From contig NC_043013.1 in the NCBI RefSeq assembly GCF_006345805.1, positions 26,102,001 through 26,166,000 on the forward strand: a DNA stretch of 64,000 nt, in the 5' to 3' direction. The translations under genes and the position numbers were made by a program. This document shows positions 16,601 to 53,300 of the stretch, one piece after another (within the stretch, counting starts at the first letter, position 1; each line of letters begins with the position of its first letter). The notes under the pieces were generated by a model, which had not been told where the DNA came from, did not search any database, and worked only from the letters and a program-made list of their open reading frames with translations. Source of the stretch: Octopus sinensis (Eukaryota).

Positions 16601-19600
16601 GACCACTGCATAAATGAGTAGGTTCATAAAACAATCCAGCTTCAAATTTCGTTTCTTAAAGATAAAAGCAAGAAAAGAAAGCTAAAATGGTATGGCCAGT
16701 GGTCTTGCAAAGATTACTAAATCTTCTTTTTCAAAGAACTGTGGTCTTGCAAAGATTACTAAATCTTCTTTTTCAAAGAACTGTGGTCTTGCAAAGATTA
16801 CTAAATCTTCTTTTTCAAAGAACTGTGGTCTTGCAAATTTTACTAAATCTTCTTTTTCAAAGAACTGTGGTCTTGCAAAGATTACTAAATCTTCTTTTTC
16901 AAAGAACTGTGGTCTCGCAAAGATTACTAGATCTTGTTTTTCAAAGAGCTGTGGTCTTGCAAAGATTACTAAATCTTCTTTTTCAAAGAGCTGTGGTCTT
17001 GCAAAGATTACTAAATCTTCTTTTTCAAAGAGCTGTGGTCTTGCAAAGATTACTAAATCTTCTTTTTCAAAGAACTGTGGTCTTGCAAAGATTACTAGAT
17101 CTTGTTTTTCAAAGAGCTGTGGTCTTGCAAAGATTACTAGATCTTGTTTTTCAAAGAGCTGTGGTCTTGCAAAGATTACTAGATCTTGTTTTTCAAAGAG
17201 CTGTGGTCTTGCAAAGATTACTAGATCTTGTTTTTCAAAGAGCTGTGGTCTTGCAAAGATTACTAGATCTTGTTTTTCAAAGAACAACGGTGGGAAAATT
17301 ATGTAGAAGGAATGAAAGATGTATGACTAACATGACAAAATGGATCCCAGGTCTGATACAATACCACATCAGATAGAAAAGTTTGGTGAACTGTAAGTCC
17401 TAAAGTACTCCTATGTCACCATCAGAGGTTGAGGTCTCAGGCAATCAACAGAGTGGTAGTACAAATATTATGATGTAGTTACTAGATTGTTTAGTGCTAA
17501 CAAACAGGTAAGGATGTAGTGACTGTGGAATGCACTTGAATATATAAGAGTTTATGAAACATAATGGCAACACAAAGAGTTATAGAGGCAATGCAAGGAA
17601 TGGTAATAAAGTGTAGTGGTTATGAAGAAGATTGGGCTGTTGTGGCTATGGATTATAATGGTAATACCCCCAAAATATTTTAGTGGAACCTTTGCTATGG
17701 CTAACTGATGTTGCTATGACTAACAAACAAGTTCATTGCATATACCTACGTTGTGTAGCATATTGATACAAAATATCGCTAACAGTAAAAACTGTATCCA
17801 ATAATATGCAGAAGTACAAATTTGGAAAATCACAAATAATAGAAATAAAACAAGGAAAAAGGTATTTACAAAATGCAGATTTTCTATTAGGTTGTTTACG
17901 ACTTGCTTTTTCACACAGATAGCGACAGGCCTGGTAGATGTTACAGAGCAGTATGAAAGGAGGAGGCAGAGGAGGGCGGATAGAGAACTCAAAGATTAGT
18001 TCATATCTTTGGAAGGACCAATGGAGACGACTTTTTTCCTGCACTCTTTGAAAAGTATTACTGAAAATAAAAACCAAAAAACATTACAGAACAGAATTTA
18101 TTTCCATTTTGAGCTTTCAATAATATTAAATTAAACCCTATTTTAAAAGAATCAATCAACAACAAACAAATTAAATTTATTTCTATTTAATACATATTGC
18201 ATCAATACATATAGTATCAATATTTCTATATATTTTCAGGGCCTCTGCCAGTCAACATTGAACATACATCTTCGCATGTATAACCAAATCCAGGCAAAAT
18301 ATTTTTAGGGGAGTGGACAGTTGCCCATGCATCCATACTGCTGATGTTTATTAACAGAAAAAATTGCCAAATTGGGCCAATGCAGCTTGATGTTGTTACA
18401 GGCTTTGCAGGGGGAATGCAAATACAGAACAAATACTGCAAGGTAACTTGCCTGACATTCTAAAAGCTATACAACCCTGGATAAGTACATTTTCTTTTGT
18501 GACACAGTAATGGTGAAAGGTAAAGTTGACCTGGGTGGGATCTGAACTCAAAGTGCAGAAGGTTAGAACAAATATTACGAGGTACTGTGCCCAACAATCA
18601 GGAACAGTCATTTTGGTGACAAAGAAAGATACCAGTTGTTGGAGCTCTTTAATCATGAAATAATTTAAGTTTGTGTAAGCTTCATTCATCTCAGTGAATT
18701 TTTCAACTACTTTATATAACTTGTAGAAGGATTTTCTCAGACTTTTTATTTTTTATAGCACTGGAGTACATCTTGATTCAAATGCAAAGAAAAAGCAAAA
18801 TGAGAAGACTACTTACTCTATTTTAGTTAACAGACAGATTTGGTAGTACTGTTGATGTTATTATTTGTATCAATATTTATGCTGTTGTTGAAGGAAAGTA
18901 ATTTCTTTTTTTTTAAACTCAGTCTGAATACCTGTCATTTACCAGTTATTTCTCCCATTACCAGGAACCACTTCTATTGACTTCCACCCTTCATTCTTAA
19001 AATTCTCACTCTCTCTTCACATTTTATAATGATCAGCATTTTGTGCCTCCAATTATCTCTCAATTTCTCCTGAACCATTTCCTATTGACCCACCCCATCA
19101 CCATACATCTCTTACTCTCCCCACACATTCTTGCAACCTAGCCATCATCTCCCTTTCCTTCACCATTCTCCTGTTTACAGCATTATTACTATTCTGCTGC
19201 TCTTCGTCCTTTCTCTATTGCCCGACATCACTTACCCTCCCCTATCTTCCCTCCAACTCATTTATCATCAACCACTCCTCCAACCTTGTTCACTATTCAC
19301 TTTCTTTATCCCCACCACTATCCCATCTCTCCCCATACATTCTAGTTACCTCTTCCCACCCCTCTTCCTATTCTTCTGTGCTCCCTTCTCTCTTCTCTTT
19401 ACCTTGTATCTTGATGGAACCCTGACAACTCCCCACTTCCATCTTTATCTCACTTTCCAACTCTACCCTGATTACTCTCATCCATTCTTATATAACATGA
19501 GGTAGCCTTGTATTTCCTCTGCAGCCAAACACCCATTTCTGTCCTTTCTTTCACACCTTTACCTCTCACTACCTGGCATAAAGCTGCCGCTTTTCTTTTC

Positions 19601-23604: not shown

Positions 23605-26600
23605 TAAAAGGATTCTTCTTCTCATTGTAAAAATAATAATCATTTTATTGTAATTATTACGACCGACATGTTGGCGGCAAGGTTGGCCCTCAACCAACAC
23701 TTTGACGCCAAACACGAAGGCTGCGTTGTTAGAGCTAAGGCACATTCGCTAAGCGGGGAGGGGACTAGAGCCGCTCGATGGGCCCGCGTGGCGGAGGCGA
23801 AGCGAGGCAACAAAGCAACCATTCGATCTTTGGTGGACCAGAACGGGCGCGAGGTTACTGAACCGAAGCAGATGTGTACGGTGTTTCAGCGGCACTTTGC
23901 TCAACTGTTTGAGACGAGCGGTGGAACGCACAATGGTGCAGACTTCGGTGTGTACCTGGACAGCCTACCACAACTCTCGGACAGCGAGGCAGAGTGCTGC
24001 GAAGGACCGATATCTGCCTGGGAAGTGGAGGAAGCGATGAAGAGTTGCACGAGAGGTAGATCGCCGGGTTTGGATGGTCTGCCCTATGAGCTTTACACTT
24101 CAATGCCAGACTTGTTTGCGGGCCTGTTGGCAAACGTCTACTGCAACTGGCAGCAAAACGGGAGAATTCCTGCTTTTGTCTGTCGAGGGGTGGTGGCTTT
24201 GCTAAAAAAGGACCCAAACAAGGGGGATGTTATAGGGAATTTTCGGCCCATCAATGCAGAGTTGAAGATTTTGGCCAAGGTGCTAGCCAAGAGATTGGCG
24301 CTTGTCATGGACAAGCTGGTCGGCAAGACGCAGACATGCGCCGTGCCAACCAGGTCGATACACGACAACCTCCATCTCATGCGCTACATCATAGAGAGGG
24401 TGGGTAACAACGCTGGTGCAGGTGGGGCTTTGATCAACTTAGATCAGAGTAAAGCCTTCGATAGGGTCGACCATTGGTACCTGGCAGCCGGCTTCGGTCC
24501 AGTCTTCCGCGGGTGGATCGCTGCTTTATACAGCAACATCTGCTCGGTGATACGGGTGAACGGTCACCTTTCGGAACCGTTCGACATCTCGCGTTCGGTC
24601 CGCCAAAGATGCCCTCTCTCCTCCCTCTTGTACATATTGACTCTCGAGCCATTACTGCGCAAGTTGGAGGCTTTGAGGGGTATCCCACGCAATCTAGGAG
24701 GCGGAAACAGCATGTCTGCCTATGCCGACGACGTCACCGTGATGGTGTTGAGCCACAGGCACATTGGCCTGATTGGCAAGACACTAAACGAGTACGAAGC
24801 GGTGACAGGGGCAAAGATTAACGCGGAAAAGTCTGTGGGCTTGCAACTGGGCACCTGGAGAGGCAAGCCCATGCTGTCCAACAGCGTCGTAGGGCACTGG
24901 ACAGACGGACCCGTTAAACTGCTCGGGGTCTGGCTCGGTCCGGACCGCCAGGTGGATAAAAACTGGGAAGAAGTGACGAGCATGGTGGCACGTCTCACCC
25001 AGAAATGGGCTGAGAGGAAGCTGTCCCTGAAAGGTCGAGTGGAGGTGGCGAATGCATACATCGCATCCATCATCTATTACCGCTTGACTGTCGTCCCTTG
25101 TCCCAACCACTGGTTGGCCAAGCTGGTACGCCTGCTCTTCGACATTTTGTGGAAGGGTCAGGTGCCACTGGTCAGGCGATCCATCTGCTGTCAACGACCG
25201 CTGAACGGAGGCCTTGGCATGCCGTGGTTACAGATGCACAGACATGCGCTCAGGCTGCGACATCTCAAGCGTTTCCTAGATGGTGATCAGGTGTGGTCGT
25301 CTTTTGTCAGACGTGACTTTCCACAGCTCGTCTCTTTGACAGAGCTGCAGACCTGGATCAAACGTAGACCGAGAAAGGGCGCTTGGCACCTCGAGTGCCG
25401 TCGAGCTCTCTCCACCCTCCGCCAGGCGGGCAATGCGATCGGTTTCAGCTCCACTCTAGCGTTCTATAGAGGGTTTGTGGAGGAAAAATGCGACGACGTT
25501 CTCGGGGAAACTCTAGGGGTTGACGATAACGAACTGAGCGGTCTGTTCGGGAGGGCTTTCGGGCTGGGGCCGATGGACAATTTCCAGAGGTCGCTCACCT
25601 GGCAGTGCTACTGAGGGGCTCTGCCTGTTCGGGATAAACTCTACCGGCACGGAAGTGCCGTCAGCCGAGCCTGCCCGAGGTGTTGCCAGGATGACAAAAC
25701 CGTTCAGCATGCACTCGTCCAGTGCCCTAGTATTGCTGAACTATGGGTTTATGTCGAACAGCTACTGTCACGTGTAGGACGGATCTGGCTATCGGCCGAA
25801 TCCATAATGAAGATTGCCCCGCCGACCTCCTTTAACAAGGAGGGTGAAGCTGTTTCCCTGTGCCTAGTGGCTGTGGCTAAAGAGGTTGTATGGTGGACCC
25901 GTTTGAAAGGGCTAAAGTCAGACACTTTCCTCTTTGGACAAGGCCTCATCAACTTTTTCAAGTTTCATTTGAAAAGGAAGATGAGGTTAGAGAGGAGAGT
26001 GCTGTCCAATAGCAAGTTTTCTGAAAGGTGGGTGAATTGTGCGAGAATGGCCAGTATAAATGGACCAATTCTCAGGTTTCGCCTGTGATTGAAAAAGGTT
26101 TTATAAAAGGAGAAAGGGGCTCTCTACCCCCCTTTTGACCAGGCTCCTGTTGGCTTTTATGGGGTTTTTTCCACCAGGAACCTTTCGAAGCACCTCCCCC
26201 TATTGGGAGTTTTTTTCATTGTTATAATCTTTCGTTGTTAAACAGTTTTTACTCGGATTTTTTCAAAAACAGACAAAACCCTTTGTAACCTTTCGTCCTG
26301 TTTTGTCCCTTTATGTTTCCTAATCATGTGTGTCAGCCCTTGTGGCCAATAAAAAGAATTAATTATTATTATTATTATAAAGGTGGCAGAATTGTTAACA
26401 CAGCAGGCAAAATGCTCAGCAGCATTTCAGCCTTCCTGTTCTGGATTCAAATTCCAATGAAGTCATCTTTGCCTTTCATCCTTTCAAGATCAATAAATTA
26501 ATTACCAGTTGAGTACTGGGATTGATGTAATCAGCTAGCCCTCTACCTCAAATTTCAGCCCTTGTACTTATAGTAGAAAGAATTATCATCATCAATGATG

Positions 26601-32304: not shown

Positions 32305-34973
32305 ATAAATGCACACACACTCACAAACTATTTTCTTTTGTATAATGCAAGAAATCTTATTTAAAAAATGAGGATCACAATTAGAAAGAGGGCAAGAAAT
32401 ACTAGCATCGTACTTATGTGTTAAAACATGCAACATAAATGAAAAAAAAGCTAAAGGCTATAACCCCGAGACTTCTAATGGCTAAAATATACACTTCATT
32501 GTGACAGTATGCATAGCATGAAATTGTTGATTCTGTTTGCATTCTGGAGGTGTGTTGTTAGAAACTCTATTATTTAAAAGTGATTATTTGATTTATAAGT
32601 TAGTTTAAAATATAGAAAGTTACATTACTGACATCTGATACAAGTGAACAATGTTCAGCATACACATAGAAGAGAAAATAATAAACATGTGAAGATAAAA
32701 AAAATAAAAACATAAATGTGAACTTAAAGTTATGGAATTTACTGGAAAAAATCAACAGTACAACCTCTAGGAAAATTGATGTTGTCGAGGACAACATTAG
32801 ACTGAGGAAAGAAAAAAAGTAAAGCCCAACATCTTTAAAGCAAAAACAGGAACTATGAAAGTTTTAGTATTTGTGTTTTAATTTTTGTATTTTATGCTTT
32901 AAAATTTGTTGCGAGATTAGTTTTGAGTCTATAAATAACTATGGTTGTATTCAGGACAGAATATATTACTGATTTCTAACTACAAATGGTGGGGCTTTGC
33001 ATTATAGTTAAGACTGCATAAGATTTTATTTGAGGGAGATTTTGCCTACTAATTACCTGAATAATCTCAATAAAGTGAAGTTTTTAACTCAATATATTAT
33101 ATCTGTAAAACCCTAGAGTTTGGATTTAATATATTGTCAAAATATATTAGAAAGAATCAGAAAATTATTAGTTTCATAATCTGGTTAATATGTACTATTA
33201 ATACTACTTGCTAAGACAAAAAAAAAAGTGTTACTTTGGGGGTGGGGGGAATAAAGGGAACACACAGAAAAATATTTCCTACATTACTCGTTAAAACTTA
33301 CCCTCATTGTCACTTACTATCTATTTTCCATGCTAGCATAGATTGGATGGTTTAATGATATCCTGTGAGTGAGAGGACTATGAATGAGAGATGAGTAGGT
33401 CATGGAGACAGGCCTGAGTTAGAAAGGATACAATATATTTCTTGAGTTTAAAAATAAATCCAGTCTTGTAACTCACCATTTTCTTAATCATTATAAGCTT
33501 CGGTCCAAGATGTCTATGGATCGAAAGCATATAAAGAAACCGGATGTAAAAGGTGATCAAATTTAAACTAAGCATCACTTTGGCAGCATCATCCAGTTTC
33601 AGAAATCGAAGAACATACCCAATGATGAACAAGATAATAGTTATAACATCAACAACATTCCAAATGTCATGGATGTAATTGACAAATTTTGAGCAAAGTG
33701 AATTAGAATTTTTTTTCAACATCTGAAATGTAAGCAGAAAAAAAATAAATAAATAAAACAGTTACATGCACACACACACAAATATGTATGTCATTATTCA
33801 GTTTTATTAAGGCGGTGAACCGGCAGAAACATTAGCGTGCCAGGCAAAATGCTTAGCGGTATTTCATCTGCATTACGTTGTGAGTTCAAATTCCGCCGAG
33901 GTCGACTTTGCCTTTCATCCTTTCGGGGTCTATAAATTAAGTACCAGTTACACGCTGGGGTCAATGTAGTCGACTTAATACCTATGTCTGTCCTTGTTTG
34001 TCCCCTCTGAGTTTAGCCCCTTGTGGGTAATAAAGAAATAGGTATTTCATCTGTCTTTACGTTCTGAGTTCAAATTCCCTTTCATCTTTTCAGGGTCGAT
34101 AAATTAAGTACCAGTTGCATACTGGGGTCGATCTAATCGACTGGCCACTCCCCAAAAATTTTGGGCCTTGTGCCTAGAGTAGAAAAGATTATTCAGCTTT
34201 ATTTCAAGATTTCTTGCCAATAGAGAAAGAGTTGGTTTCTAACCTAGATCCAAGTCTCCTTCATTGAAATTTCAACATCATCAACAGGGTATTTTCTATG
34301 TATATGTGCAGATTTGTATGTTTTGTTTCATGTTTGTCTTCTCATGCATATATTTGCACATCCAGATATGTGCATATATACTTAAATGATAAACTTATGT
34401 ATGTGTGTATATGTACATATATATGTGTGTATAGTCTTAGTGATCAAGTAAGAGAATAATGAATCAGTAATGAAATGACAATATATGCTGAAAGCAGTCA
34501 GGTTAATCGCTTTTTCTGGCTACAAGGATAAAAATGCATTGCTTAACCATAACTACTTCCCACATTGTGGCTGAAAATGTGTGTTGACTAAGAATACATA
34601 TCTGTAACGTTACCTTATATCATTTTATATATTATGTATATATATATATTCTCTAAGACTCCGCCGGTTACGACGATGAGGGTCCCAGCTGATACGATCA
34701 GCGGAACAGCTTGCTCGTGAAATTAACGTGCAAATGGCTGAGCATTCCACAGACACGTGTACCCTTAACGTAGTTCTCGGGGATAATCAGCGTGACACAG
34801 AGAGTGACAAGGCTGACCCTTTGAAATACAAGTACAACTCATTTTTGGCAGCTGAGTGGACTGGAGCAACGTGAAATAAAGTGTCTTGCTCAAGGACACA
34901 ACGCGTCGCCGGGAATCGAACTCACAACCTTACGATCATGAGCCGAACGCCCTAACCACTAAGCCATGCGCCC

Positions 34974-35021
<48 letters not shown>

Positions 35022-37026
35022 AATGACTATTTATGATGGAATCATATTTCTAAAAGAGTTAATACTTACCATTTCTCTTTTGAAAATCTGAAAGAATAAA
35101 TAGAATTGCCGTCAGTCAATAAATTGAAGCTATGCAATCATCTTCAGAGAGGAGGCTCCGGAAAATCAGTATAAATCCATCATGCTTAGTGCAATATATG
35201 TATATGTATATATATACACATGTGTGTGTGTGTGTGTGTGTGTGTATAATGTATATATATTCAACAACAACTGAGGAACGGCCTCAATAGGCCATTCAAC
35301 CCACTAGAAAGAATGGCCTATTGAGGCCGTTCCTCAATTGTTGTTGAATTTATATATTTAGTCTCTGACTATTTTCTCTTTCTCACTAAACCGCTGGTGG
35401 CGAAAAAATTTCTATTGAATTTTTTGCTACCCTATATTGATTAAATATATATATATATATATAACGGGAAGCTTTATGAAAATAAACAAAGACGAAGGCA
35501 GGTGGAGTACAAACAAACAATTGTATTAGTATGGCGCTCAGGAATAGAAATAAAACAAGTCTTTAACGTTTCGAGCCTACGCTCTTCAACAGAAAGATAC
35601 ACAGAAAAGAAACACGGAGAGAAACAAGGAGAGAAAAAAATGCGTGCAGAAGCTAGCAGTCTAGTAACAAACTGTGAGAAAGAGTTCCTTCAAAGAGGTG
35701 TGTTAAACATCCTGTTTTTTGTAATGTTACAGTTTTATTTTAAATCTCTATATTTAGAAACTTTCTTATAAAACTTTTGTCAGTATATGTGCCTGTGTGT
35801 GTGTGTGCTTAGATATATGCATGTGAATATGTATGTGTGTGTATGTGTACATATATATATATATATATAACTAATGTAGGATAAAATTTTTTTCAAGAAA
35901 AAAATTTTATCAATGGCCAGTATATCAAAAAATACCTTTAAAGGTTAAATTTATAAGTAATTTACAAAATAAGGGCAAAAGAAAAATTCTAATGCCAAAT
36001 ATGCTGCAAAAAAGACAAAATTGTCAATAACCATTATAATTTATGCGTCTCGAAACAAACCGATAGAAATTTCTAAAAAATCCGTTATTACCATATTGGT
36101 CCCAATTTCGGGGTTAATTCATAAGAATTTTCACCTCTTCAGTGATAAATACGTGAGATATAAGTGAAATATTTACTCATACCCATGGAAAATTATTTAT
36201 ATATATATATACACATACACACACAAGGTGATATCAAATAATTCAAAGAGAACATGTGTAGACTAAAGAGGAATGAAGGTAGTAAGCTCCACTGGATGTG
36301 CAGCATCAATGTGCATAAATGACAAAGTGCAAATGTGTTGAGAGAAAAGTCAGGCATAAAAGGAATCAAATGCAGCATGCAAGAGAGGATACTACATTGG
36401 TTTGGACAAGTGATGCATATGAATGACGATTGCTGTATAGAGAAATGCCAATCAATGAAAGTGGGCGATGCCCATGAATAGGAAACCCAGGAAGACATGG
36501 GATGAAGTAGTGGGGGGGGGTGATCTCAGGATGTTGGGGCTCGTGAACGAAATGACAATGGACTGGGATGTCTGACAATATGAGGTTCTTGAGAAAACTC
36601 ACCCACTTCAGCAAACCTGAGTTCTAGAAGCATTGTGCTTCACCCACACATAACAATAAAATTTTCACGCACCCCCATCCCAACAAATCAAACTACATCT
36701 CCTCCCCCTCCCAAACTGTATCTCTTCTCTTGCTCACATTTCCTCTTCATACTCTATGATTATCTCCCACTCACCAATCCAGTCCTCACTACTCTGCTCA
36801 TTACTGTATCATTACTTCTCCATCCCTTCTCTCTCAATATACCCAGATTCTCACCAATCACAGCATTCCCCACATCCACTCCCTATTTCATGGCAATACC
36901 CTGCTAATACCTGCCATCATTCATCCCTTTCTTCTTAACTCTATCAGTCCATCTATGCCCTAATCCTTGTTCCTTACGAATATACCCTATCACTACTGTC
37001 ATCCTCTCCTGCTCTTGCTGTCTCCT

Positions 37027-37058
<32 letters not shown>

Positions 37059-37797
37059 GGTAACCTTGTCTCTCCTCGTCAGTGTCACACCTGTTTCTAC
37101 CCTCATTCTTGATTAATTTCTTTCTCTATCTCTCCTCTTGCTCTCCTCTCTGGCTAGGTAACCATGTATCTCCTTTACAGCAGCACATCTTTTTCTGCCT
37201 TCCTCCTTGTTAACTCCCACTTTATCTCTCTATGTTTCACTCCCTCTCTTCTTCTCTCTTTCTCTGTCTCTCTCTCTGCCTATCTCTCTGGCTGAGTAAC
37301 CATGTACCTCCACTACAGCAAAACATGTGCTTTTGTCTCTGTCACACTCTAACCTTTTATCACCTCCTCCAGTGCCCCCTCCCCTTGCAAAGATTGTCTT
37401 GCAAAGTTACTTGGTGATACAGTGCAGGTGCCATTTAAAAAGTGATTGGCATTTGGAAGGGCATGCCAAAAACCATGCCAAAACAGACACAGAAGCATGG
37501 TGCATACTCCTGCCTGGCCAACTCCAGTCAAACTGTCCAACTCAGGCCAGTGTGGAAGGAGGACATTAAACGATGATGATGATGATGACAGATAGGCACA
37601 TAAGTGCAAAACAAGGTGGAATAAATAGTACTCAAATACCAAAGACAGAGTAATATACTTTATTATTAAAGCTGCAAAATATTCACAGAACTGTTTTCCA
37701 GTTTTATGTTCCCATTCATTGGACAGTTTTGATGAATACAGTCTGACAAACAGGAACGTGAAACCGAGTAAGAGTTGTATGAATATTTTGTAGTTTT

Positions 37798-37836
<39 letters not shown>

Positions 37837-40800
37837 TCACTTCAGAAATGTAACCACATGTGGATTGTGGGCAATTTTTCCCCCTTGCTCTTTGAACTTT
37901 CCTCTTTCCAGTGAAGTGCTATGCTCAAAATGTTAACAACTCTCTCCTTTCACCAAGCAATCAAATTAATATATTTCTTGTGCTTGTCCTCACATTCATT
38001 TTATTCTTTTTTCTCTGATTTTTGTTTGTTCTTTGAATTGACTACACTCACACAAACACACATATATATGGAAATAATTGAGATTCAGTTCAATTAGGTA
38101 TCTAAGTTGAAGCACCAATCAGTGTGGTATTATCCATACAACTCAAAGTAAGGTGAATAAAATCAAAACAAGCAACAGGATATCAAGATGTGATGCAGTA
38201 CAACTGTTTCAAGCAGCTCCATTTAATTGAACAATGCAATCATTACATCAATTAAAATACACACACACACACACACACACACATATAATAAAAAATACAC
38301 ATTAAGGACAGGACATCATCAGCATGGCATCGAGCTTCTCAGTAATTTGTCAGTTCTTATTTGGTATTACTGCCCTCCAAGACAAGTTGGACATATATAA
38401 CTCAGGCATTTCACTTTGGGCAGAGAATTTATTGTCTGGGTATTCTTTCTCATGAAATGGCATTTGGATAATAAGGAGAGGAAGAAGCTCTAATGCTCTT
38501 AAAATATGAATGCGGAAACGAATTTTTCCTGCCTCTAAAACTAAAGCTTACTTGCAACGGTAACACAATAACTAATATAACATCTTCTTTCTAAAGACAA
38601 CTATGACATTAAAACAAGAAATCTTTGAAACCAGAATATGCAGTAGGATGAGAAACTGGTGAAGTTAATAGAAATGTCCTATAAGAGAACGAAGATATGT
38701 TCTTTTGATATTTTCACTGAAAAAAACTTGATAACGCATGCAGTATTTATACACACACAAACACGCACACACACATAACTACATTTATACATTTACATAC
38801 ATATAAACAATATATCACTCTTTATATATTACTCTTTTATTTGCTTCAGTCATTTGACTGTGGCCATGCTAGAGCACTGCCTTTAGTTGAACAAATCAAC
38901 CCCAGGACTCATTCTTTGTACTTATTCTACCTTGTACTTATTCTATCGCTCTCATTTGCTGAACTGCTGAGTTATGGGGGATGTAAACACACCAGCATCA
39001 GTTGTCAAGTGATAGTGGGGGGACAAACACAGACACACATATTATATATATATATATATATAATGTTGAAGCATTCCTGTCACAATCTGAACCTGATGAA
39101 TGCTTAAATGCAAGAAAGTATACTAGTTCAATGAGAATAAACATTTAATATTTAATTTTCAATATTTCATTTGTTCAATAAGACAATCAATATTTCATTT
39201 CTTTCTTACTATATATTCTACATTCTATATCCTATATTAATATTAGCCAAAGATAAACCTCTGTACCTGGCTTTCATTGACATGGAGAAAGCCTCTGACA
39301 GGGTCCCCAATCCCTTATCTTGTGGTCAATGAGGAAACTAGGGATAGATGAATGGTTAGTGAGAGCTGTGTGAGCCATGTACAGAGACACTGTCACTAAG
39401 GTGAGGGTTGGCAACAAGTACAGTGAAGAATTCCAGGTAGAGGTAGGGGTCCACCAACGTTCAGTCCTATTTATCATAGTCCTCCAAGCAATAACAGAGG
39501 AATTCAAGACAGGATGCCTCTGGGCACTCCTCTAGGCTGATGACCTTGCTCTAATTGCTGAGTCACTATCAGAACTAGAGAAGTTTCATGTGTGGAAGCA
39601 AGGATTAGAACTGAAGGGCCTTAGAGTCAACTTAGCTAAAACCAAAGTACTAATAAGTAGGAAGGTAGACAAATCACAAATCCCTTCAGGTAGATGGCCC
39701 TGCTCGATCTGTAGTAAAGGCATAGGTAGAAACTCTATAATATGTACTCAGTGTAAGCTATGGACACATAAGAGGTGCAGCAATGTCAAAGGAAGGCTAA
39801 CTAAGAAGATAGTTTTTGTATGTGGCAGATGCTCAGGAGCAATAATCACTGAAAATGTGCAGAGAACAACTTCTGCCACATTCCAGGGAGAAAAACTAGA
39901 AGTAGTTGATAGCTTCCATTACCTACATGAGCAAGTCAGTAGTGGGGGAGGGTACTCTGAAAGCGTAACTGCTAGAATAAGAATAGCCTGGGAAAACTTC
40001 AGAGAGCTCTTACCTCTGCTGGTGACAAAGGGCCTCTTGCTCAGAGTAAAAGGCAGGCTGTATGACGCATGTGTACGAACAGCCATGCTACATGGCAGTG
40101 ACACATGGGCCATGACTGCTGAGGATATGCGTAAGCTCACAAGAAATGAAGCCAGTATACTCCGATGGATGTGTAATGTCAGTGTACATACTCAGCAAAG
40201 TGCAAGTACCTTGAGAGAAAAGTTGGACCTAAGAAGCATCAGTTGTGGTGTGCAAGAGAAACGATTGCACTGGTATGGTCATGTGGTGAGCATGGATGAG
40301 GATAGCTGTGTGAAAAAGTGCCACACCCTAGTGGTTGAGGGAACCTGTGGAAGAGGTAGACCCAGGAAAACCTGGGATGAGGTGGTGAAGCACGACCTTC
40401 AAACATTAGGCCTCACCGAGGCAATGACTAGTGACTGAGACCTTTGGAAATATGCTGTGCATGAGAAGACCCGGCAAGACAAGTGAGACCATAACCTGTG
40501 GCCTTTACCAGGGGTGTAGCCAGTCCACTTATGCATACCTTTCCTATGGACACAAAACTCTGCTTGTGGAGACCTGTTGAGTCAAGTGAAATTGAAATCA
40601 AAATTGAATTCGAAATTGAACCAAATTCGACTGGCACCCATGCCAACCTTCCTTCATTGGACACTAAACTCTGCTTGCAAAGACCTTTTGGGGCAAGTGA
40701 AATCGAACCAAATTCAATGACTGGCACCCGTGCCAGTCGGTCACTAACAGCTTCATCCGAGCAGGATCACTGCCAGAGCAGCTGCCTGGCTTCTGTGCCG

Positions 40801-41255
40801 GTGGCACGTAAAAAGTACTATGTAAGCGTGATCGTTACCTGTGTTGCCTTTCTGGCACTTGTGCCGGTGGCATGTGAACAAAACATTTGAGTGAGGTCAT
40901 TGCCAGTGCCACTGGACTGACTCCTGTGCAGGTGGCACATAAAAAACAGCATTTGAGTGTGGCCATTGCCAGTACCACCAGACAGACCCTCGTGCCGGTG
41001 GCATGTAAAAGCACCCACTACACTCTCAGAGTGGTTGGCATTAGGAAGGGCATCCAGCTGTAGAAACTCTGCCAGATCAGATTGGAGCCTGGTGCAGCTA
41101 TCTGGTTCACCAGTCCTCAGTCAAATCGTCCAACCCATGCTAGCATGGAAAGCAGACGTTAAATGATGATGATAATAAATAACATATAAAAAACATACAG
41201 AGTTGGAATTCCTTTGAGTAATATATTATTTTATACACAATCATACAAACCCCTT

Positions 41256-41329
<74 letters not shown>

Positions 41330-44300
41330 GATGGGTTTCTTTCAGTTTCTGTCTACCAAATCCACTGCTAACAAGGCTTTGGTTGACCCAAGGCTGTAAT
41401 AGAAGATACATGCCCAAGGTGCCATGCAGTGGGACTGAACCCAGAACCATGTGGTTGGTGAGCAAGCTACTTACCTTACTCCTGCACCTACATCACACTG
41501 TCATCACACAGGATATTCTCTTTATTATTTCTAAAACTCTTTATATCAGAAAATATATGAACAACTGTGTTGGCAACACTGGCACCAGTACCACTGCTGT
41601 AGCAACCATTGCTGCCACCATTACCACCACCACCACCACCACCACCACCATCAAACTTTACTCTCTTTTTCATACAGATATATATTGGATAGTTCATCAA
41701 AGCAACATCTCTCTCTAAATTTCTATTATACTATTACATCTCATCTGTGAATCTCACTATTTTCAGATCTTCATTCCAAGTTCTTCCTTATTCTGCTTCC
41801 AGCAGACTACCCTCATCTTTTTTACACAGAATTCATAACCACTAAACACTAGATTAGTTTTGATGAAATAATTTTGAGACAATATTTACCTGGTGTATTT
41901 CTTCTGTAAATATTCCAATCACCCACACAATAAGAAACCATTCTAGATAAAAAATCTGAGGTTTCAGCTCAACAAGTAACACATAGCTATAGAGGCCAAG
42001 GAAAATTATATAAAATATCTGAAAGAAAAAAAGAATTTGAGAAAAATTAAATTTATTGTCGCAAGGATTTGATGACAAATACTTGATTATATTCAAACAA
42101 AGGGAACACATGAGAAAAGATTAAAAACTGAAAACCCATTTTTATTTTCTCTCATGTGTTCTTTTTATATCTGCTGTGTTTAAATGTAAACAATAAACTA
42201 GAAGGGTGTAAGTAAAATTGTCAAAATCTATGCTTTGAGCATGTATAAATGTGAATGCGTGCGTACATGAATATGTGTGTTCTTTTGTATGAAGGTACAT
42301 AAGTGTATGGGTGTCTGCATGTCAGCACAATCATGAACATGAGTATATGTGTGTATATGTATGTATATGTGTATGTCTTGATATATCTGTACATATGTAA
42401 ATGTGTGTGTATATGTGTGCATATTGTCTGTGTATATGAATATTTACATATGTGTACTTTCTATCAAATGAAACACAGTTTTGTTGTTAAGAAGATCATT
42501 TTGTAATCCTGCTGCCACAGGTTCAATCCTACAACATGGAATCTTGAGCAAGTATCTTCTACCATAATCTCAGAGCGACCAAAACAGGGTGAGTAAATTT
42601 TATGTTATGAGAAAGAAACAAAGTTTTAATATTTCAAACTCTTCTCCTTCTTTACAGAGAGAAAGGGAAGGAGAGAGAGAGAGAGAGAGAGAGAGAGGAA
42701 GATAGAGAGATTATCATTTTGTTTAGCTTCATAATTATTAATGCAGATACAAATAAAGGGGAGAAATAACAACTGGAACATTCATTGTTGGAGCCTAAAG
42801 AGGAGAAACCTAAAGAGGAGAAGTGAATGATGGTGTTTAGTATATGAGAGGAACTGAATATCCAGAAAGGAACAGAGGCTGTATTTTTACAATTCTAAGG
42901 ATTAAAATGCTACAAAAATGGAATTATTAAAATAGCAATTAAAACTATTTTCTCTTTAACTAAGACAGTGAAGTAATATTAATTTCAAATTTTGGTACAA
43001 GGCCAGCAATTTCAGGGATGAGTAAGTCAATTACATTGATTGACCCCAGTGCTCAACTGGTACTTATTGACCTCAAAAGGATGAAATATAAAGTCAACCC
43101 TGGCTGAATTTGAACTCTGAATGTAAAAACAAGAAATGTCACAAAGCATTTTGCCCAGTGCAGCAACGATTCTGCTCGCTCACCACTTTAGACAATGAAG
43201 TAATATTAATTTCTGAGGTATAAGGGATCAAAGGTTAGGGGCTGGTGTAGTCATTTAAAACAGCACCAGCATTTGACTGATACATTATATTACTGACCCC
43301 AGAAGGATGAAGGATGAATATAGAATGAAGAAAGGCTCTAACTAAAATCATCTGATTGTCTGATTTTCATCTAATTCTATCAAGAAATATTAAAAACAAA
43401 TTAACTCATTTAAATATGCTCACATTTCAGTGAAGTTTAATAGCCAAAATACCTTCTCAAAAATCTTCAACCTTATTCATTTAGTTTTAACCTTAAATCT
43501 TTGTCCTTATTCATCTAGTTTTAAAGGTGTTATTCAAAAGAAGGGCAGTGAGAAATTGGAAGAAGAAATTGAGCACTTTAGTAAAATTTGTTTTAAAAAG
43601 GTAATATTTTCTTTTCTCTTAAAATTTATTTGAAAGGAAAATTTACCCACACAAAGAAACATTTAAAATATTTACGTGTTGGTACATACCAAATTGCTCA
43701 AAAACTTTATGATAGGAGCATTATAAAATGATGCACATCTGCAGAACATACGGCAACATCTTCCACATGGCTTGCAACAACATCTAGATATGAATTAGAA
43801 TCATTTATTTTACTAATTAATAATAAATTGCAAATAATTTTGTGTGTGTGTGTGTTATACCATCTAATCATAAAATATACAATTGTAACATGAAAACCAT
43901 CTCTAACAGACAAGCAGGTAACTAAAACCATCCCCTTGTCACTATACATCACTGATGCAGCCAAATCTCATAGGCTCAAATCATTCATGTGCAGCAGCAA
44001 AATCAAACAATGTGAACATTTGGTAAACCTCATCCAATTTCACTAATTGGAGCAGATTATGCCCATCACAGTAACAATCTATTTCAGCACATCATATCAG
44101 ATCTTAATCTAGATAACTCCAGCAGTACCATATCTACTCTTGTGTGGATATACACTCTGCCAGTTAGTCTGTTTGCCATTCCTTCAAGTACAGCACCAAA
44201 AATAACGAATAACAACGCTGGAGTGAGTACATAGCCTTGCTTTACACTATGGGTGACTGGAAAGTGGGATGAACTGTCACTTCCAAGAGAGAATGTGGAA

Positions 44301-47300
44301 AACATACTATTATGAACCCACTTGAATATCTCCACAAATATATCAGGACACCCATATCTTTTGAGAATGGTTTATAAGCTTTGCTCTCTACATGGTTGAA
44401 AACCTTTATAAATTTAAGAAATATGACAAAAAGTGAGACCTGTTATTCTATTAACTTTACTTGAATTACTTACAAGGTGAAAATCATATTGCTCTATATT
44501 TGTCAGTAGGTCCAGGCTAGTAATTTAGAAATTTTCAAGGAGACACTCCAAATCCTCACAAAAAATTCTTCAGGAACAGTTTAATAGCTTTCTAAAATGT
44601 TGCTACTAACACTTTATGATAGCATGTTTCTTGGTGCAGATATGCAAGTCAGCCTTACTCCTCATTAGTGTGTTACCATCTTTCAGGAGATTGTGCACCT
44701 CTTTCTCAATGATATAGAAGAACTTCACATTTTGAAAATCAGCAATGGTATGAACTTCATCCAGCTTCTTATCCCACCGTCTGATAGAGCACTTCCTATT
44801 GACGAAAAGATTTTCTGTCTTTGAGTGAAGCTGGTAGTAAGCTGTGTATCCCATACATTAAAAACAGATTAGTGGTGCCTTCAACGTTTTGATAACAGTT
44901 GTTCTATCTCTGTCAGTCAGCATACATTTTGAGAAACTGAATGAGGCAGCAGCTACTCAGAAGACTCTCTCTTCAGCTGAACCTATCAAGCTGGTGCAGT
45001 GTAAGGTAGCACTTTTAATTGGTTGGTCATATTCACTGAAATTACATGTTTCTACATTTTCTTACGTTGCTGACATTCAGTTATTCTGGTGCAATTTTGC
45101 TGATTTTTCTTACACTTTCATCTCACAAATTTGTTGAAAAAAAGCTGCAATAATTATGCACCAACGCAATACTATATAAATACTTGAATGATTTGTGAAG
45201 AACACTACATAATAGTTGATGCTATGGCTGTGTAACTAAGGAATTCCCAGCTATGTAGTTTTGGGGTCAGCCCCACTGTGTAGCACATTGAGTAAGGGCC
45301 TTCTATTATAGCCATAAGCTGACCAATGCCTCATACACTATAGTGAATAAATTTGATGGACAGAAACTGTTTTTTCCTTTTGCTAAACAGTGTGTGTGTG
45401 TGTGTGTGTGTGTTATACCATCTAATCATAAAATATACAATTGTAACATGAAAACCATCTCTAACAGACAAGCAGGTAACTAAAACCATCCCCTTGTCAC
45501 TATACATCACTGATGCAGCCAAATCTCATAGGCTCAAATCATTCATGTGCAGCAGCAAAATCAAACAATGTGAACATTTGGTAAACCTCATCCAATTTCA
45601 CTAATTGGAGCAGATTATGCCCATCACAGTAACAATCTATTTCAGCACATCATATCAGATCTTAATCTAGATAACTCCAGCAGTACCATATCTACTCTTG
45701 TGTGGATATACACTCTGCCAGTTAGTCTGTTTGCCATTCCTTCAAGTACAGCACCAAAAATAACGAATAACAACGCTGGAGTGAGTACATAGCCTTGCTT
45801 TACACTATGGGTGACTGGAAAGTGGGATGAACTGTCACTTCCAAGAGAGAATGTGGAAAACATACTATTATGAACCCACTTGAATATCTCCACAAATATA
45901 TCAGGACACCCATATCTTTTGAGAATGGTTTATAAGCTTTGCTCTCTACATGGTTGAAAACCTTTATAAATTTAAGAAATATGACAAAAAGTGAGACCTG
46001 TTATTCTATTAACTTTACTTGAATTACTTACAAGGTGAAAATCATATTGCTCTATATTTGTCAGTAGGTCCAGGCTAGTAATTTAGAAATTTTCAAGGAG
46101 ACACTCCAAATCCTCACAAAAAATTCTTCAGGAACAGTTTAATAGCTTTCTAAAATGTTGCTACTAACACTTTATGATAGCATGTTTCTTGGTGCAGATA
46201 TGCAAGTCAGCCTTACTCCTCATTAGTGTGTTACCATCTTTCAGGAGATTGTGCACCTCTTTCTCAATGATATAGAAGAACTTCACATTTTGAAAATCAG
46301 CAATGGTATGAACTTCATCCAGCTTCTTATCCCACCGTCTGATAGAGCACTTCCTATTGACGAAAAGATTTTCTGTCTTTGAGTGAAGCTGGTAGTAAGC
46401 TGTGTATCCCATACATTAAAAACAGATTAGTGGTGCCTTCAACGTTTTGATAACAGTTGTTCTATCTCTGTCAGTCAGCATACATTTTGAGAAACTGAAT
46501 GAGGCAGCAGCTACTCAGAAGACTCTCTCTTCAGCTGAACCTATCAAGCTGGTGCAGTGTAAGGTAGCACTTTTAATTGGTTGGTCATATTCACTGAAAT
46601 TACATGTTTCTACATTTTCTTACGTTGCTGACATTCAGTTATTCTGGTGCAATTTTGCTGATTTTTCTTACACTTTCATCTCACAAATTTGTTGAAAAAA
46701 AGCTGCAATAATTATGCACCAACGCAATACTATATAAATACTTGAATGATTTGTGAAGAACACTACATAATAGTTGATGCTATGGCTGTGTAACTAAGGA
46801 ATTCCCAGCTATGTAGTTTTGGGGTCAGCCCCACTGTGTAGCACATTGAGTAAGGGCCTTCTATTATAGCCATAAGCTGACCAATGCCTCATACACTATA
46901 GTGAATAAATTTGATGGACAGAAACTGTTTTTTCCTTTTGCTAAACAGTGTGTGTGTGAGTGTGTGTGTGTATGCACATGCATGTGTGTGCATTTTTGTG
47001 TTTGTGTTTCAGTGTTTTAAATTGTTTATATTCCTGTAACATAGCATTTCAGCAAAACATGACATATTAAGAACCAAACTTGAAATAAGTAATGACATCA
47101 GTTTGATTGACTAAACCCTTCAAAGTGGTGCTCCAGCATGGTTACAGTTCAACAACTGGAATAAGTAATTAAGTATAATCTTTAAAGTTCAGAGTTTTAG
47201 AAAGTAAAGTGTTTCATGAATTACACGAAACTGTGCAGTTATGTGTTATGAAGTTGATCAACAAATGAATTTATCCCTGGATAAGATACTAATCCATTGT

Positions 47301-50300: not shown

Positions 50301-53300
50301 TATCCATGCAATCTCATTATGTAAATAGCTCATCTTAGCCCTGATGTGGAAAGCTGACCTGTAATGGATGAAGAGGTCCTGGCAAGTTGATTTGTGGTAG
50401 AACACCATGTCAATTTTTCTCCATTATCTGTGACATTTAACTGAATGTCTAGCTAAGAGGGAGAACCATCGCTGTTTGAGTCTCCAATGGTGAAGCTAAT
50501 GAGTTGGTCCACCTTACTGAGATTCTTTAGCATTGTGGAAGTGTCCTCGTGGAATGAAGTGAGCATGAGGATCTCATACATATGAATGGTGTAAAAGGCA
50601 TATGAGTGGCAGATACTGAGTACCCTACACTCCAGTTGGTTTAAGTAAGTAATAGCAACCAGGCCTGAGATGTTCAGCCCCTATAGACAGGACTGAACAC
50701 TATATGTGTTTCCAAGGAAATCACAATGTGTGTTGGTGACAACAACTGACAGTATCTGGTAGACGTTGGCTGAAATAAATCTGAAACATATAAGGAGGTG
50801 ACACATTTCATGATCAGTTCAACCATGGTAAGGGCAGGAACAAAGAAGTGTAGTGAGACCATGTTTAAGCTGAAGGTATATCTGTTATATCTGAAGGTAT
50901 CAGAGATGGCCAGTGGCTCCAATAAAAGCATCATATGTCACCAACACCATCTTCTACCATCACCATGTGAAAAGACATCAAAACGACCAACGGTTGGAGA
51001 GTTGCTGCTAATCCTAATGCTGGGCAGTTTAAATAAAATAACAAAATTGATGTAACTAGACATTTTAAATTGTTTCCTTCTGAGGATGGGCCTTTGCACC
51101 TAAAATGTAAAAGTTTTTTGTAACACTTTCTGCCTTGTTAGAAGCTTTCTTTATTTTCCTTTTCTGCTTCTGTACTGCCATGCTTTAAGTGAGCTGCAAC
51201 ACTCATATATGTAATTGTAATTCATTGTCTAGTGTCAAAGGTAGTAACTTTTTTTTGGTTTACTCACAAGTATCCTCCTTCATTAAATTTAAACTTAAGA
51301 TTAAAATTATAATAATTATGGAAATCTCATCACACAAACAGAAGTAGGAAATACTTTTGTATGTTAAGGGAGAAAGGAGTACAGTCAAGTCTGATGAAAA
51401 TGAATTCAACCAACTTGCTTGCTTTTGAGTAATTTTGAATCTATTGGTAACATAAAATAGCTGTATTCTACACCTTTAATTGTGTGTGTGTGTGTATGCA
51501 AGCATGCATTTATATGTGCATTAATGCATTAACCGTATTCTACACTTGTAAACATATATAAATTAATTACATATTCATTATGATGAGTGCTCCATATTCA
51601 TTCAACAGATATGTAGATAATTAAAGAGAAACAAAAAGAGCATAATTAATTTAATTAACCATCAATGAATTGCTAGTTATTATTTCAATGGGTTGAAGAT
51701 TGGCAATAATAACTTTGATAGCATCTGACATCAGCTAAATAAAGTAAACTATATTATAGATGTACTTATCATATTGCATATGTAAACTATATAATAAAGA
51801 AAAAATAATGTATATATAATATGTGTATACATGTATCATGTGTCCTACATGATACATGTAAACAATATAATATACAGATTTGAATATTTTTAAAGAGTGT
51901 GATACATGTAATCATGTAATCTGTGCATGTGTAGAATATACATGTGTAAAATATGATGCATGTAAGTTAGATAATACATGACCCAAATAAGACATGTAAG
52001 TTTTATATGAGAATTTAAGTTCTCTACCTTCAAAATGTTGGTCTTTTTACAAATTTTTCCCCTCCAAATTTTTCCCAACAAAGATTGACAAGCAGCCTGG
52101 GACACAAATTTCTTATTGTTAATATTAAATGCTATTTGCATGCATGAAGCATCATTCCAAGTTTTCCGTCGTAGCAGCAGTAAATCTAATGTCCGTTTTT
52201 CATCCGCGTAGTAACATTCAGTCAAAATTCCAATGGCACGTTCTTCATAAAGACTAAAATTAACAGAAAAATCAGTATTTATAAAAGTTCCAAATCAAAT
52301 GAAAGAGAGAATATTTACATATTTATAATCAACCAACAATAACTTCAATATTGATTGGAGAAAAACTCTTGTGCATACTAAGTTGCCACTGTGATTCTCA
52401 GTTTTTATTTAGCATATAGACATTTTTAACAATGTCAGCATCAACAATTATCCACCTATCCATACATATTTTTATATATATACTCACTCAGCATGTTCCT
52501 GTAGTTGGATCCTTCTGTCATAATCTTTACACTTTGTTTTCAGGAATTCGAGCACATTATTTGCAATTAGAGCAGATGGTAAAGCGCCCTAGTAAAATGA
52601 CAATTGTATCAAAATACTAAATGTGAACACATTTAATCACAATATGCATAAGACAAATGAGAATTAAGTAATATCCAGCTGGAAAGGATGCTAGCGTTTC
52701 TTTCAGGTAACTGAATGTTTGCTTCTTTTACTAAACAGTTAGGTGAAGAGAGCCATACAAAATGAACTATCTTCCTCTGAGATTTAATGACAAGAATATA
52801 TTTTAATTAATTGAATCTATCAATTGAACAACTTGGTTAAAGTTAATTGTTATCAATATTCTCATTAGGTACCTTGCTAATTATTCTATATTAATTGACT
52901 GAATCCATTTGCATTATTTTCAATCTATTTCTAATGCTAGTACCATATTTCCTAAGCTAGTAGTCTTTACAGAGAGATTATAATAATAATGAAATTATTG
53001 TATACAGTGCTCAGGTGCACCACAACTTGTCAGAAAGTGCGTATAAAGTATATGCAGTAATGTACAAATGTCTGGAAAGTGAACAATGTATGAGTCAGAT
53101 ACATGCTTGTGTGTGTATGGAGGGGAGAAAATCAGGTGTAGTGTTGGCGAATCTCAGAAAGCATGGATGTTTTGAAGAATGCAGTGCTCCGATAACTAAC
53201 AACTGATGCCAACAGTTTGTTCCATGCTTCAGCAACTCTCAGTGTGAAAAAATGTTTCCTAAAGTCATGGGAGCTATGCTGTTTTCTGACTTTGTAAATA

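What the first reader, a model, noticed from the sequence alone, without database searches (positions are those of the whole stretch)
35070..35087. Candidate 18-nt cassette microexon beside the Ca2+-binding site
Minus strand: ...ttgACTGACggcaattctatttattctttcAG | ATT TTC AAA AGA GAA ATG | GTAAGTATT. The branch point, pyrimidine tract and near-consensus donor all fit, and the phase is 0-0. Inclusion would add IFKREM straight after the S2 EEIHQ motif. Without it the S2-S3 linker already has the usual TRPM2-like length (20 aa from Q to W), so it would be an optional insert. Frame-preserving microexons of 3-27 nt are a known neural splicing class in bilaterians. It could tune Ca2+ sensitivity (inference).
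Basis: partly seen in the sequence, partly recalled or inferred. Interest (0 to 1): 0.7.

Follow-up and report, generated by a model that had tools for sequence, protein, structure and literature searches.

The report
Conserved 18-base exon in octopus TRPM
The 18-base stretch is very likely a genuine tiny coding exon of an octopus TRPM2-like ion-channel gene: public annotation of a sister species already includes it, and it is conserved as far as the paper nautilus Argonauta, but whether it is optional or alters calcium sensing is untested.

Summary
The sequence is exactly as described (minus strand 35087..35070, cag|ATTTTCAAAAGAGAAATG|gtaagt, phase 0-0, IFKREM). Splice-site strength alone does not prove it. 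Octopod DNA yields about 0.07 equally strong pseudo-microexons per kb, so about 0.5 are expected in this 8.2-kb intron. A TE-borne 18-nt decoy in the same intron scores higher.

Comparative data settle it:
- The window is colinear (86-95% identity, dS 0.11) with the Octopus bimaculoides gene for RefSeq XP_014774531.2 (TRPM-beta). Both versions of that protein read EEIHQ-IFKRDM-MLTK, encoded by the orthologous 18 nt (17/18 identical).
- In Argonauta hians the introns are otherwise unalignable. Yet the homologous 1-kb intron holds acag|ATTTTCATCAGCAGTTGG|gtaagt: the same length, phase, first 7 nt and donor, and by far the best pseudo-exon there.
- The neighbouring tandem paralog lacks the element.

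An AlphaFold model puts the six residues as about 1.7 extra helical turns of S2. They directly follow the Gln that aligns with Ca2+-coordinating Q896 of nvTRPM2.

So the exon is real. It is a known kind of feature, already annotated in a congener. Interest is modest.

The parts
35070..35087 (-). 18-nt coding microexon ATTTTCAAAAGAGAAATG (IFKREM), phase 0-0
   Evidence: Sequence. Orthologous exon annotated as CDS in O. bimaculoides XP_014774531.2 (L008 27066-27083, 17/18 identical). Homologous 18-nt element in Argonauta (L001 14013-14030).
35088..35119 (-). 3' splice-site region: AG at 35089-35088, pyrimidine tract, branch-like TTGAC/CTGAC at -32/-28; AG-exclusion zone of about 42 nt
   Evidence: The tract and CAG are conserved in Argonauta and O. 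bimaculoides.
35064..35069 (-). 5' splice site GTAAGT (ATG|GTAAGTA, 9.8 bits)
   Evidence: GTAAGT is identical in O. bimaculoides and Argonauta.
41890..42018 (-). Upstream exon (S1-S2), ending ...IFTEEIHQ; holds the Ca2+-site Glu and Gln
   Evidence: residue mapping to nvTRPM2 E893/Q896 from the alignment and PMC5976436.
33477..33722 (-). Downstream exon (S2-S3 linker, S3, S4), starting MLKKNSNS..., containing WNVVD (Ca2+-site Asn and Asp)
33723..41889 (-). The 8167-nt interval between the S2 and S3 exons; with the microexon it splits into introns of 6802 nt (35088-41889) and 1347 nt (33723-35069)

Best explanation
The 18 nt are a genuine internal coding exon of a TRPM-beta (TRPM2-like, NUDT9H-less) cation-channel gene of an Octopus species closely related to O. 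bimaculoides. The spliceosome joins it between the S1/S2 exon and the S3/S4 exon. This adds six residues (IFKREM) immediately after the Gln of the S2 E-x-x-Q motif, which helps coordinate the activating Ca2+ ion, and lengthens the Q-to-W segment from 20 to 26 residues. The insert is predicted to prolong the cytoplasmic end of helix S2 by about 1.7 turns. The exon arose before the Octopus/Argonauta split. Selection has kept its length, phase, splice sites and first two codons (Ile-Phe), while the other four codons drifted. A tandem paralog lacks it. In the annotated transcript of the sister species the exon is included, so inclusion is probably the predominant or only form.

Shown: the sequence, the orthology, the annotation of the orthologous exon, conservation to Argonauta, and the position relative to the Ca2+-site residues.
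Inferred: actual splicing in the window's species, the helix extension, and any effect on gating.
For: (1) The window and O. bimaculoides locus L008 are colinear at 86-95% identity through exons and introns; dS is 0.109 and dN/dS 0.6 over 464 codons.
(2) The protein from L008, XP_014774531.2 (P0091), and its older version (P0230) read EEIHQ-IFKRDM-MLTK. The six residues are encoded at L008 27066-27083 by cag|ATTTTCAAAAGAGACATG|gtaagt, 17/18 identical to the window.
(3) In Argonauta hians (L001), the 1023-nt homologous intron contains acag|ATTTTCATCAGCAGTTGG|gtaagt. It is 18 nt, phase 0-0 and open, with PWM sum 16.8 against 4.9 for the next best candidate.
(4) Elsewhere only exons align between the two genes, and those alignments stop 4-20 nt into each intron. 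Background density of strong 18-nt pseudo-exons is about 0.01 per kb, and sharing the first 7 nt by chance has a probability of about 2e-4 (own estimate).
(5) The pattern CAGATTTTCA-N11-GTAAGT occurs nowhere else in seven loci or in the window, so it is not a dispersed repeat.
(6) In a 60-protein alignment the six residues form a clean insertion at the exon boundary.
(7) The AF2 model of P0091 (pLDDT 86, pTM 0.78) has one S2 helix spanning 623-650, which includes EEIHQ (638-642) and IFKRDM (643-648). The best structural match is nvTRPM2 with Ca2+, 6co7.
Against: No RNA reads could be examined, so the RefSeq model is only indirect transcript evidence, and I could not see its evidence notes. The Argonauta annotation (P0001) omits the element. 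Only 10 of 18 exon bases and 2 of 6 residues are shared with Argonauta, and flanking intron similarity beyond the splice signals is not significant (p = 0.05-0.4). No Logan transcript assembly clusters with the orthologous protein, which suggests low expression. Local pLDDT at the insert is only about 70.
Confidence: 0.82

Rival explanations
1. One reading: a regulated cassette microexon, skipped in most tissues and included in neurons or sensory cells (SRRM/eMIC-type programme), giving two channel isoforms with different Ca2+ sensitivity.
For: Skipping would leave the canonical 20-aa linker, which aligns without gaps to solved TRPMs. The tandem paralog works without the exon. The AG-exclusion zone is long, 42-60 nt, in all three species, as reported for microexons (PMC8797185). 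The insert directly follows the residue aligned with Q896, whose mutation shifts K1/2 for Ca2+ about 20-fold in nvTRPM2 (PMC5976436).
Against: No skipping isoform is annotated for the ortholog, and both annotation versions include the exon. The UGC motifs lie at -49, -53 and -59, not close to the 3' splice site. Flanking introns are not conserved as is typical of regulated microexons. No tissue data were available.
Confidence: 0.35
2. A chance pseudo-exon that is never spliced; the RefSeq inclusion would be a gene-prediction artefact.
For: About 0.5 equally strong pseudo-microexons are expected per 8-kb intron, and a TE-borne decoy in the same intron scores higher. The window-to-O. bimaculoides identity (17/18) is what neutral divergence predicts. 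Unverified gastropod models also carry unrelated inserts at this boundary.
Against: The same 18-nt architecture, with identical first 7 nt and donor, is kept in Argonauta, where the introns are otherwise saturated. The joint chance probability is roughly 1e-6 (own estimate). Two separate RefSeq versions carry it. An ab initio predictor gains nothing in frame from adding an 18-nt exon between two phase-0 junctions (inference).
Confidence: 0.07
3. A conserved non-coding splicing element, such as a decoy or intron-subdividing exon that helps intron removal and is spliced out again or causes transcript decay, rather than a protein-coding insert.
For: Conservation is concentrated on the splice signals and the first 7 nt, including synonymous positions, while the remaining codons are not conserved.
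Against: The length is a multiple of three and the frame is open in all three species. The Argonauta intron is only 1 kb and needs no subdivision. The AG and GT are 18 nt apart, unlike a recursive AG|GT site. RefSeq translates it.
Confidence: 0.05

Closest known systems
Annotated coding exon of Octopus bimaculoides LOC for XP_014774531.2 / XM_014919045.2 ('TRPM member-like 2', TRPM-beta in PMC13143021 Table S1)
   Same: The locus is orthologous and colinear. The 18-nt exon sits in the same position with the same splice sites, and 17 of 18 bases are identical (IFKRDM vs IFKREM).
   Different: It is a different species (dS about 0.11), with one conservative E/D change. The exon has not been described or discussed in the papers I could search.
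Bilaterian neural microexons (3-27 nt) controlled by the eMIC domain of SRRM3/4 (PMC8797185)
   Same: The size class, frame preservation, strong branch-point-like motifs and long AG-exclusion zone all match, as does the location in an excitability-related membrane protein.
   Different: Alternative use and neural enrichment are untested. UGC motifs are 49-59 nt upstream rather than adjacent to the 3' splice site. Flanking introns are not conserved, and the donor is strong.
Splice variants of vertebrate TRPM channels (e.g. TRPM3 pore-loop variants, TRPM2 deletion isoforms; own knowledge, not tested here)
   Same: Alternative or small exons modify gating or permeation modules of a TRPM channel.
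   Different: As far as I know, none of these inserts residues after the S2 Ca2+-coordinating Gln. A full-text search for TRPM + 'S2-S3 linker' + 'splice variant' produced no title pointing to such a variant.
nvTRPM2 Ca2+ site (PDB 6co7; PMC5976436)
   Same: All five residues align: E893, Q896, N918, D921 and E1110 correspond to the window's E and Q of EEIHQ, N and D of WNVVD, and E of LIFEF. It is also the best fold match.
   Different: nvTRPM2 has a 20-aa Q-to-W segment with no insert and carries a NUDT9H domain. The octopus ortholog ends at residue 994 with no Nudix-type Pfam hit.

Membership tests
Frame-preserving microexon (3-27 nt) | Length 3-27 nt, a multiple of three, no in-frame stop | tested here: met
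   18 nt encoding IFKREM; the same holds in O. bimaculoides and Argonauta.
Frame-preserving microexon (3-27 nt) | Canonical AG/GT sites of functional strength | tested here: met
   Acceptor 6.9 bits and donor 9.8 bits, against 8.4-10.3 for the flanking real sites; rank 2 of 192 in the intron.
Frame-preserving microexon (3-27 nt) | Present in mature mRNA | tested here: inconclusive
   It is included in the RefSeq CDS of the ortholog in two versions. No reads could be inspected, and the window's own annotation was not available.
Frame-preserving microexon (3-27 nt) | Exon and splice sites conserved across species | tested here: met
   The Argonauta element has the same length, phase, first 7 nt and donor, in an otherwise unalignable intron.
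Neural eMIC/SRRM-dependent cassette microexon | Both inclusion and skipping isoforms exist | not testable with these tools
   Only inclusion models are found in the ortholog's cluster. The Argonauta model skips it but is fragmentary.
Neural eMIC/SRRM-dependent cassette microexon | Neural-enriched inclusion | not testable with these tools
   No expression data are accessible.
Neural eMIC/SRRM-dependent cassette microexon | [quoted passage not shown] | tested here: inconclusive
   The nearest UGC is at -49, -53 and -59. The AG-exclusion zone is 42-60 nt in the three species.
Neural eMIC/SRRM-dependent cassette microexon | Conserved flanking intron sequence | tested here: not met
   Beyond the splice signals, upstream similarity has p = 0.05-0.11 and downstream p = 0.39 against shuffles.
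TRPM-beta (TRPM2/4/5/8-type) channel | TRPM transmembrane domain and TRP helix | tested here: met
   E = 2e-55 to nvTRPM2 6co7 and similar values to TRPM3/5/4/2. Fold match to 6co7 has TM-score 0.79.
TRPM-beta (TRPM2/4/5/8-type) channel | Five Ca2+-site residues (E, Q on S2; N, D on S3; E on TRP helix) | tested here: met
   All five align with E893/Q896/N918/D921/E1110 (alignment; residues defined in PMC5976436).
TRPM-beta (TRPM2/4/5/8-type) channel | N-terminal SLOG/LSDAT (MHR) domain | tested here: met
   Pfam LSDAT_euk and TRPM2 hit the orthologous protein. The window itself holds only residues ~370-994.
TRPM-beta (TRPM2/4/5/8-type) channel | Phylogenetic placement | tested here: met
   The published tree lists XP_014774531 as TRPM-beta (PMC13143021 Table S1).
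TRPM2 proper (ADPR-gated chanzyme type) | C-terminal NUDT9H domain | tested here: not met
   The ortholog ends at residue 994 after the coiled coil, with no Nudix-type Pfam hit on record.

The most novel reading that the evidence does not exclude
An octopod-lineage microexon, older than the Octopus-Argonauta split, that is alternatively included in particular tissues (for example nervous system or sucker sensory epithelium). It would lengthen helix S2 right after the Ca2+-coordinating Gln and so shift the Ca2+ dependence or coupling of a TRPM-beta channel. That would be a splice-encoded tuning knob at the conserved TRPM Ca2+ site, which has not been described for any TRPM.
Probability: 0.25. 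Interest if true: 0.55.

Novelty: already known. Interest (0 to 1): 0.3.

Why it matters
However, the orthologous exon is already part of the RefSeq protein of O. bimaculoides, so its existence is not new. Three things are added here:
- The exon predates the Octopus/Argonauta split.
- It is missing from the adjacent tandem paralog.
- It sits directly after the residue equivalent to Q896 of the TRPM Ca2+ site.

If it proved to be alternatively spliced, it would offer a natural pair of isoforms for testing how the cytoplasmic end of S2 sets Ca2+ sensitivity in TRPM2/4/5/8-type channels. It also shows that gene models lacking it, such as the Argonauta model, are probably incomplete.

Tried and rejected
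- Word-indexed protein search with the 131-aa insert-containing junction found nothing. A longer query was needed.
- Exact look-up of the window's S3/S4 ORF found no record, so the window's species could not be named. It is a congener of O. bimaculoides.
- The O. bimaculoides and O. vulgaris 'TRPM4-like' loci (L002, L003) turned out to be a more distant paralog whose S2 exon lies more than 10 kb upstream. No element was found in the 10 kb available.
- L004 ended before the relevant exons. In L005, S2 and S3 are in one exon. L006 and L007 are distant relatives without a clear counterpart.
- Logan hits P0075 and P0076 were human TRPM2, and the other Logan hits inspected were distant relatives or did not cover this junction. 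The Logan transcript family P0231 has no insert but is only about 51-59% identical, so it is not the ortholog.
- Repeat origin was rejected: the element is single-copy in the window and loci.
- Known ncRNA was rejected: only sub-threshold microsatellite-type miRNA matches nearby, none over the exon, and no tRNA.
- Inserts at the same boundary in Lymnaea (+5 aa) and Lottia (+16 aa) models are unrelated in sequence and unverified, so I did not use them as support.

Full report
**Observation.** The upstream exon ends ...GIFTEEIHQ|gtaaat at 41890. The downstream exon begins cag|ATGTTGAAA (MLKKNSNS...) at 33722. Both junctions are phase 0 and 8167 nt apart. With a simple position-weight scoring, the candidate acceptor scores 6.9 bits and the donor 9.8 bits; the four neighbouring real sites score 8.4-10.3. 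Branch-like TTGAC/CTGAC motifs lie at -32/-28, and the nearest upstream AG is at -44.

**Chance.** The window alone does not make the case. Among 192 frame-preserving, open AG..GT pairs of 3-27 nt in this intron the candidate ranks second. First is an 18-nt decoy at 40344..40327 that belongs to a repeated element. In 422 kb of octopod DNA, counting both strands of the window and three loci, I found 31 pseudo-microexons of the same quality. That is about 0.07 per kb, or about 0.5 per 8-kb intron. The candidate is not repeated DNA. The 27-mer is unique at up to 3 mismatches, and it lies in a 170-bp single-copy island (35022..35193). That island sits between an (AT)n tract and a (CA/TA)n tract, and a SINE copy (34669..34977) begins about 90 nt beyond the donor. 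No tRNA or Rfam family covers it.

**The gene.** The joined exons match solved TRPM channels at E = 2e-55 (nvTRPM2, 6co7) and similar values for TRPM3/5/4/2. The insert-free junction aligns across the S2-S3 linker without a gap. Counting along that alignment:
- the second E and the Q of EEIHQ align with nvTRPM2 E893 and Q896;
- the N and D of WNVVD align with N918 and D921;
- the E of LIFEF aligns with E1110.

These are the five residues that form or support the activating Ca2+ site. Q896A raises K1/2 from about 2 to about 40 uM (PMC5976436). In 100 relatives with both motifs, the Q-to-W distance is 20 aa in 45 and 21 aa in 18, with a range of 12-59.

**Orthologous exon in O. bimaculoides.** An exhaustive search with the Argonauta relative returned P0091, which reads EEIHQ-IFKRDM-MLTKSSNSL...WNVVD. 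P0091 is RefSeq XP_014774531.2, 'TRPM member-like 2' of Octopus bimaculoides. The only other member of its 90% cluster, a 1041-aa older version, has the same insert, and no skipping isoform is present. Its locus (L008, CM046617.1 8.02-8.06 Mb) is colinear with the window at 86-95% identity through exons and introns. dS is 0.109 and dN/dS 0.6 over 464 codons. The window therefore holds the ortholog in a congener, covering residues ~370-994. The six residues are encoded at L008 27066-27083 by ...ttctatttattctttcag|ATTTTCAAAAGAGACATG|gtaagtatt, 17/18 identical to the window. At this short distance that identity is what neutrality predicts. Its value is that the annotation pipeline placed a coding exon there, in two versions. 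A published phylogeny lists this protein as TRPM-beta (PMC13143021 Table S1). It has LSDAT/SLOG, TRPM2 and ion-transport Pfam hits but no Nudix-type domain.

**Deep conservation.** In Argonauta hians (L001) the homologous intron is only 1023 nt. It contains tttttacag|ATTTTCATCAGCAGTTGG|gtaagtgat at 14013-14030: 18 nt, phase 0-0, open (IFISSW). It shares the window's first 7 nt and the GTAAGT donor. Its PWM sum is 16.8, and the next best pair in that intron scores 4.9. Between the two genes only exons align colinearly, at 67-80% nucleotide identity, and those alignments stop 4-20 nt into each intron. Apart from microsatellites, this element is the only colinear match between the two introns (E = 0.024 in the intron-versus-intron search). 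Three probabilities combine: a background of about 0.01 strong 18-nt pseudo-exons per kb, a 1-kb intron, and about 2e-4 for sharing seven given bases. Together they give a coincidence of the order of 1e-6 (own estimate). The architecture pattern occurs nowhere else in the seven loci. Conservation is narrow, however. Only 10 of 18 exon bases and the first two residues (Ile-Phe) are shared. Flanks beyond the splice signals are not significantly similar. The Argonauta gene model omits the element, but that model is fragmentary.

**Paralogs.** The neighbouring gene in O. bimaculoides (XP_014781149 family, L009, about 23 kb away) reads EEIHQ-ILTRSS..., and its 1189-nt intron has no comparable element. 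The Argonauta protein is about equally distant from both Octopus genes, at 54-56% identity. The simplest history is an exon present in the octopod ancestor and lost in one tandem copy (inference). The 'TRPM4-like' gene (L002, L003) is a further paralog, and its S2 exon lay outside the retrievable flank.

**Structure.** An AlphaFold2 model of the insert-containing O. bimaculoides protein, built with 60 aligned relatives, has mean pLDDT 86 and pTM 0.78. It predicts a single S2 helix from 623 to 650 that includes EEIHQ (638-642) and IFKRDM (643-648). A loop follows, then a linker helix (657-666) and S3 (668-688). Local pLDDT is about 70. The best structural match is Ca2+-bound nvTRPM2 (6co7, TM-score 0.79). 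In a 60-protein alignment the six residues form a clean insertion at the exon boundary. [quoted passage not shown] An insert just after this Gln could therefore alter access to or geometry of the site. This is inference only.

**Class membership.** Size, frame, splice signals and cross-species retention fit a microexon. The features of the SRRM/eMIC neural programme could not be established. The nearest UGC motifs lie 49-59 nt upstream rather than close to the 3' splice site, the flanks are not conserved, and no tissue or isoform data were accessible. The long AG-exclusion zone (42-60 nt) is compatible with that class.

**Verdict.** The 'optional, neural, Ca2+-tuning' reading is open; I put it at roughly one in three for a cassette and lower for a demonstrated gating effect. 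Because the orthologous exon is already in a public RefSeq model and the kind of feature is well known, novelty is low and interest modest.

Noticed in passing
window 43841-45398 and 45399-46956: A perfect head-to-tail duplication of 1558 nt, 100% identical over 1560 compared bases, in the intron upstream of the S1/S2 exon. O. bimaculoides L008 appears to have a single copy. It is either very recent or an assembly artefact.
   Followed up: partly
window 40327-40344 (-), 60621-60638 (+); L003 near 7668 (-): A repeated element carries its own strong 18-nt, frame-preserving pseudo-exon (GTTCCCTCAAC..CTAGG, VPSTTR). It outscores the real microexon within the same intron, which shows how easily TE copies supply decoy exons here.
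   Followed up: partly
window 16699-17285: A 42-nt minisatellite, 14 copies at 97% identity, in an intron downstream of the TRP-helix exon.
   Followed up: no
window 43579-43767 (-): The Cys-rich exon between S1a and S1/S2 (O. bimaculoides residues ~567-606...CCCKSCGECC...) is only about 44% identical, with gaps, between the two Octopus species. It is far more diverged than the other exons, which are 80-92% identical.
   Followed up: no
whole gene, window vs L008: dN/dS is about 0.6 (dS 0.109, dN 0.065 over 464 codons). This TRPM-beta copy evolves unusually fast for an ion channel and sits in a tandem family on O. bimaculoides chromosome CM046617.1, with genes at 8.02-8.06 Mb and 8.09-8.13 Mb and a further paralog at 30.3 Mb.
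   Followed up: partly
window 61391-62407 (-), 53135-54885 (-), 24000-26000: A Tc1/mariner-like transposase ORF, reverse-transcriptase-like ORFs, and a GC-rich island (GC 0.54 against about 0.35 for the window) all lie inside introns of the gene.
   Followed up: no
P0094 (Lymnaea stagnalis CAL1536039.1), P0097 (Lottia gigantea XP_009055754.1): Gene models of two gastropod TRPM-beta relatives carry unrelated inserts (+5 aa, +16 aa) at exactly the same EEIRQ| boundary. Either the intron repeatedly hosts small exons or these are prediction artefacts.
   Followed up: partly
L005 5980-6363 (ENA ERZ25071447, unidentified animal): In this relative, S2 and S3 are encoded in one exon with a 20-aa linker, so the phase-0 intron after the Ca2+-site Gln is not universal.
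   Followed up: no
L001 10001-18657 (Argonauta hians BAAFZT010000103.1): The Argonauta TRPM-beta gene appears to be split into four separate gene models (389, 283, 98 and 453 aa) and lacks the 18-nt element in its CDS, so the annotation is probably incomplete.
   Followed up: no
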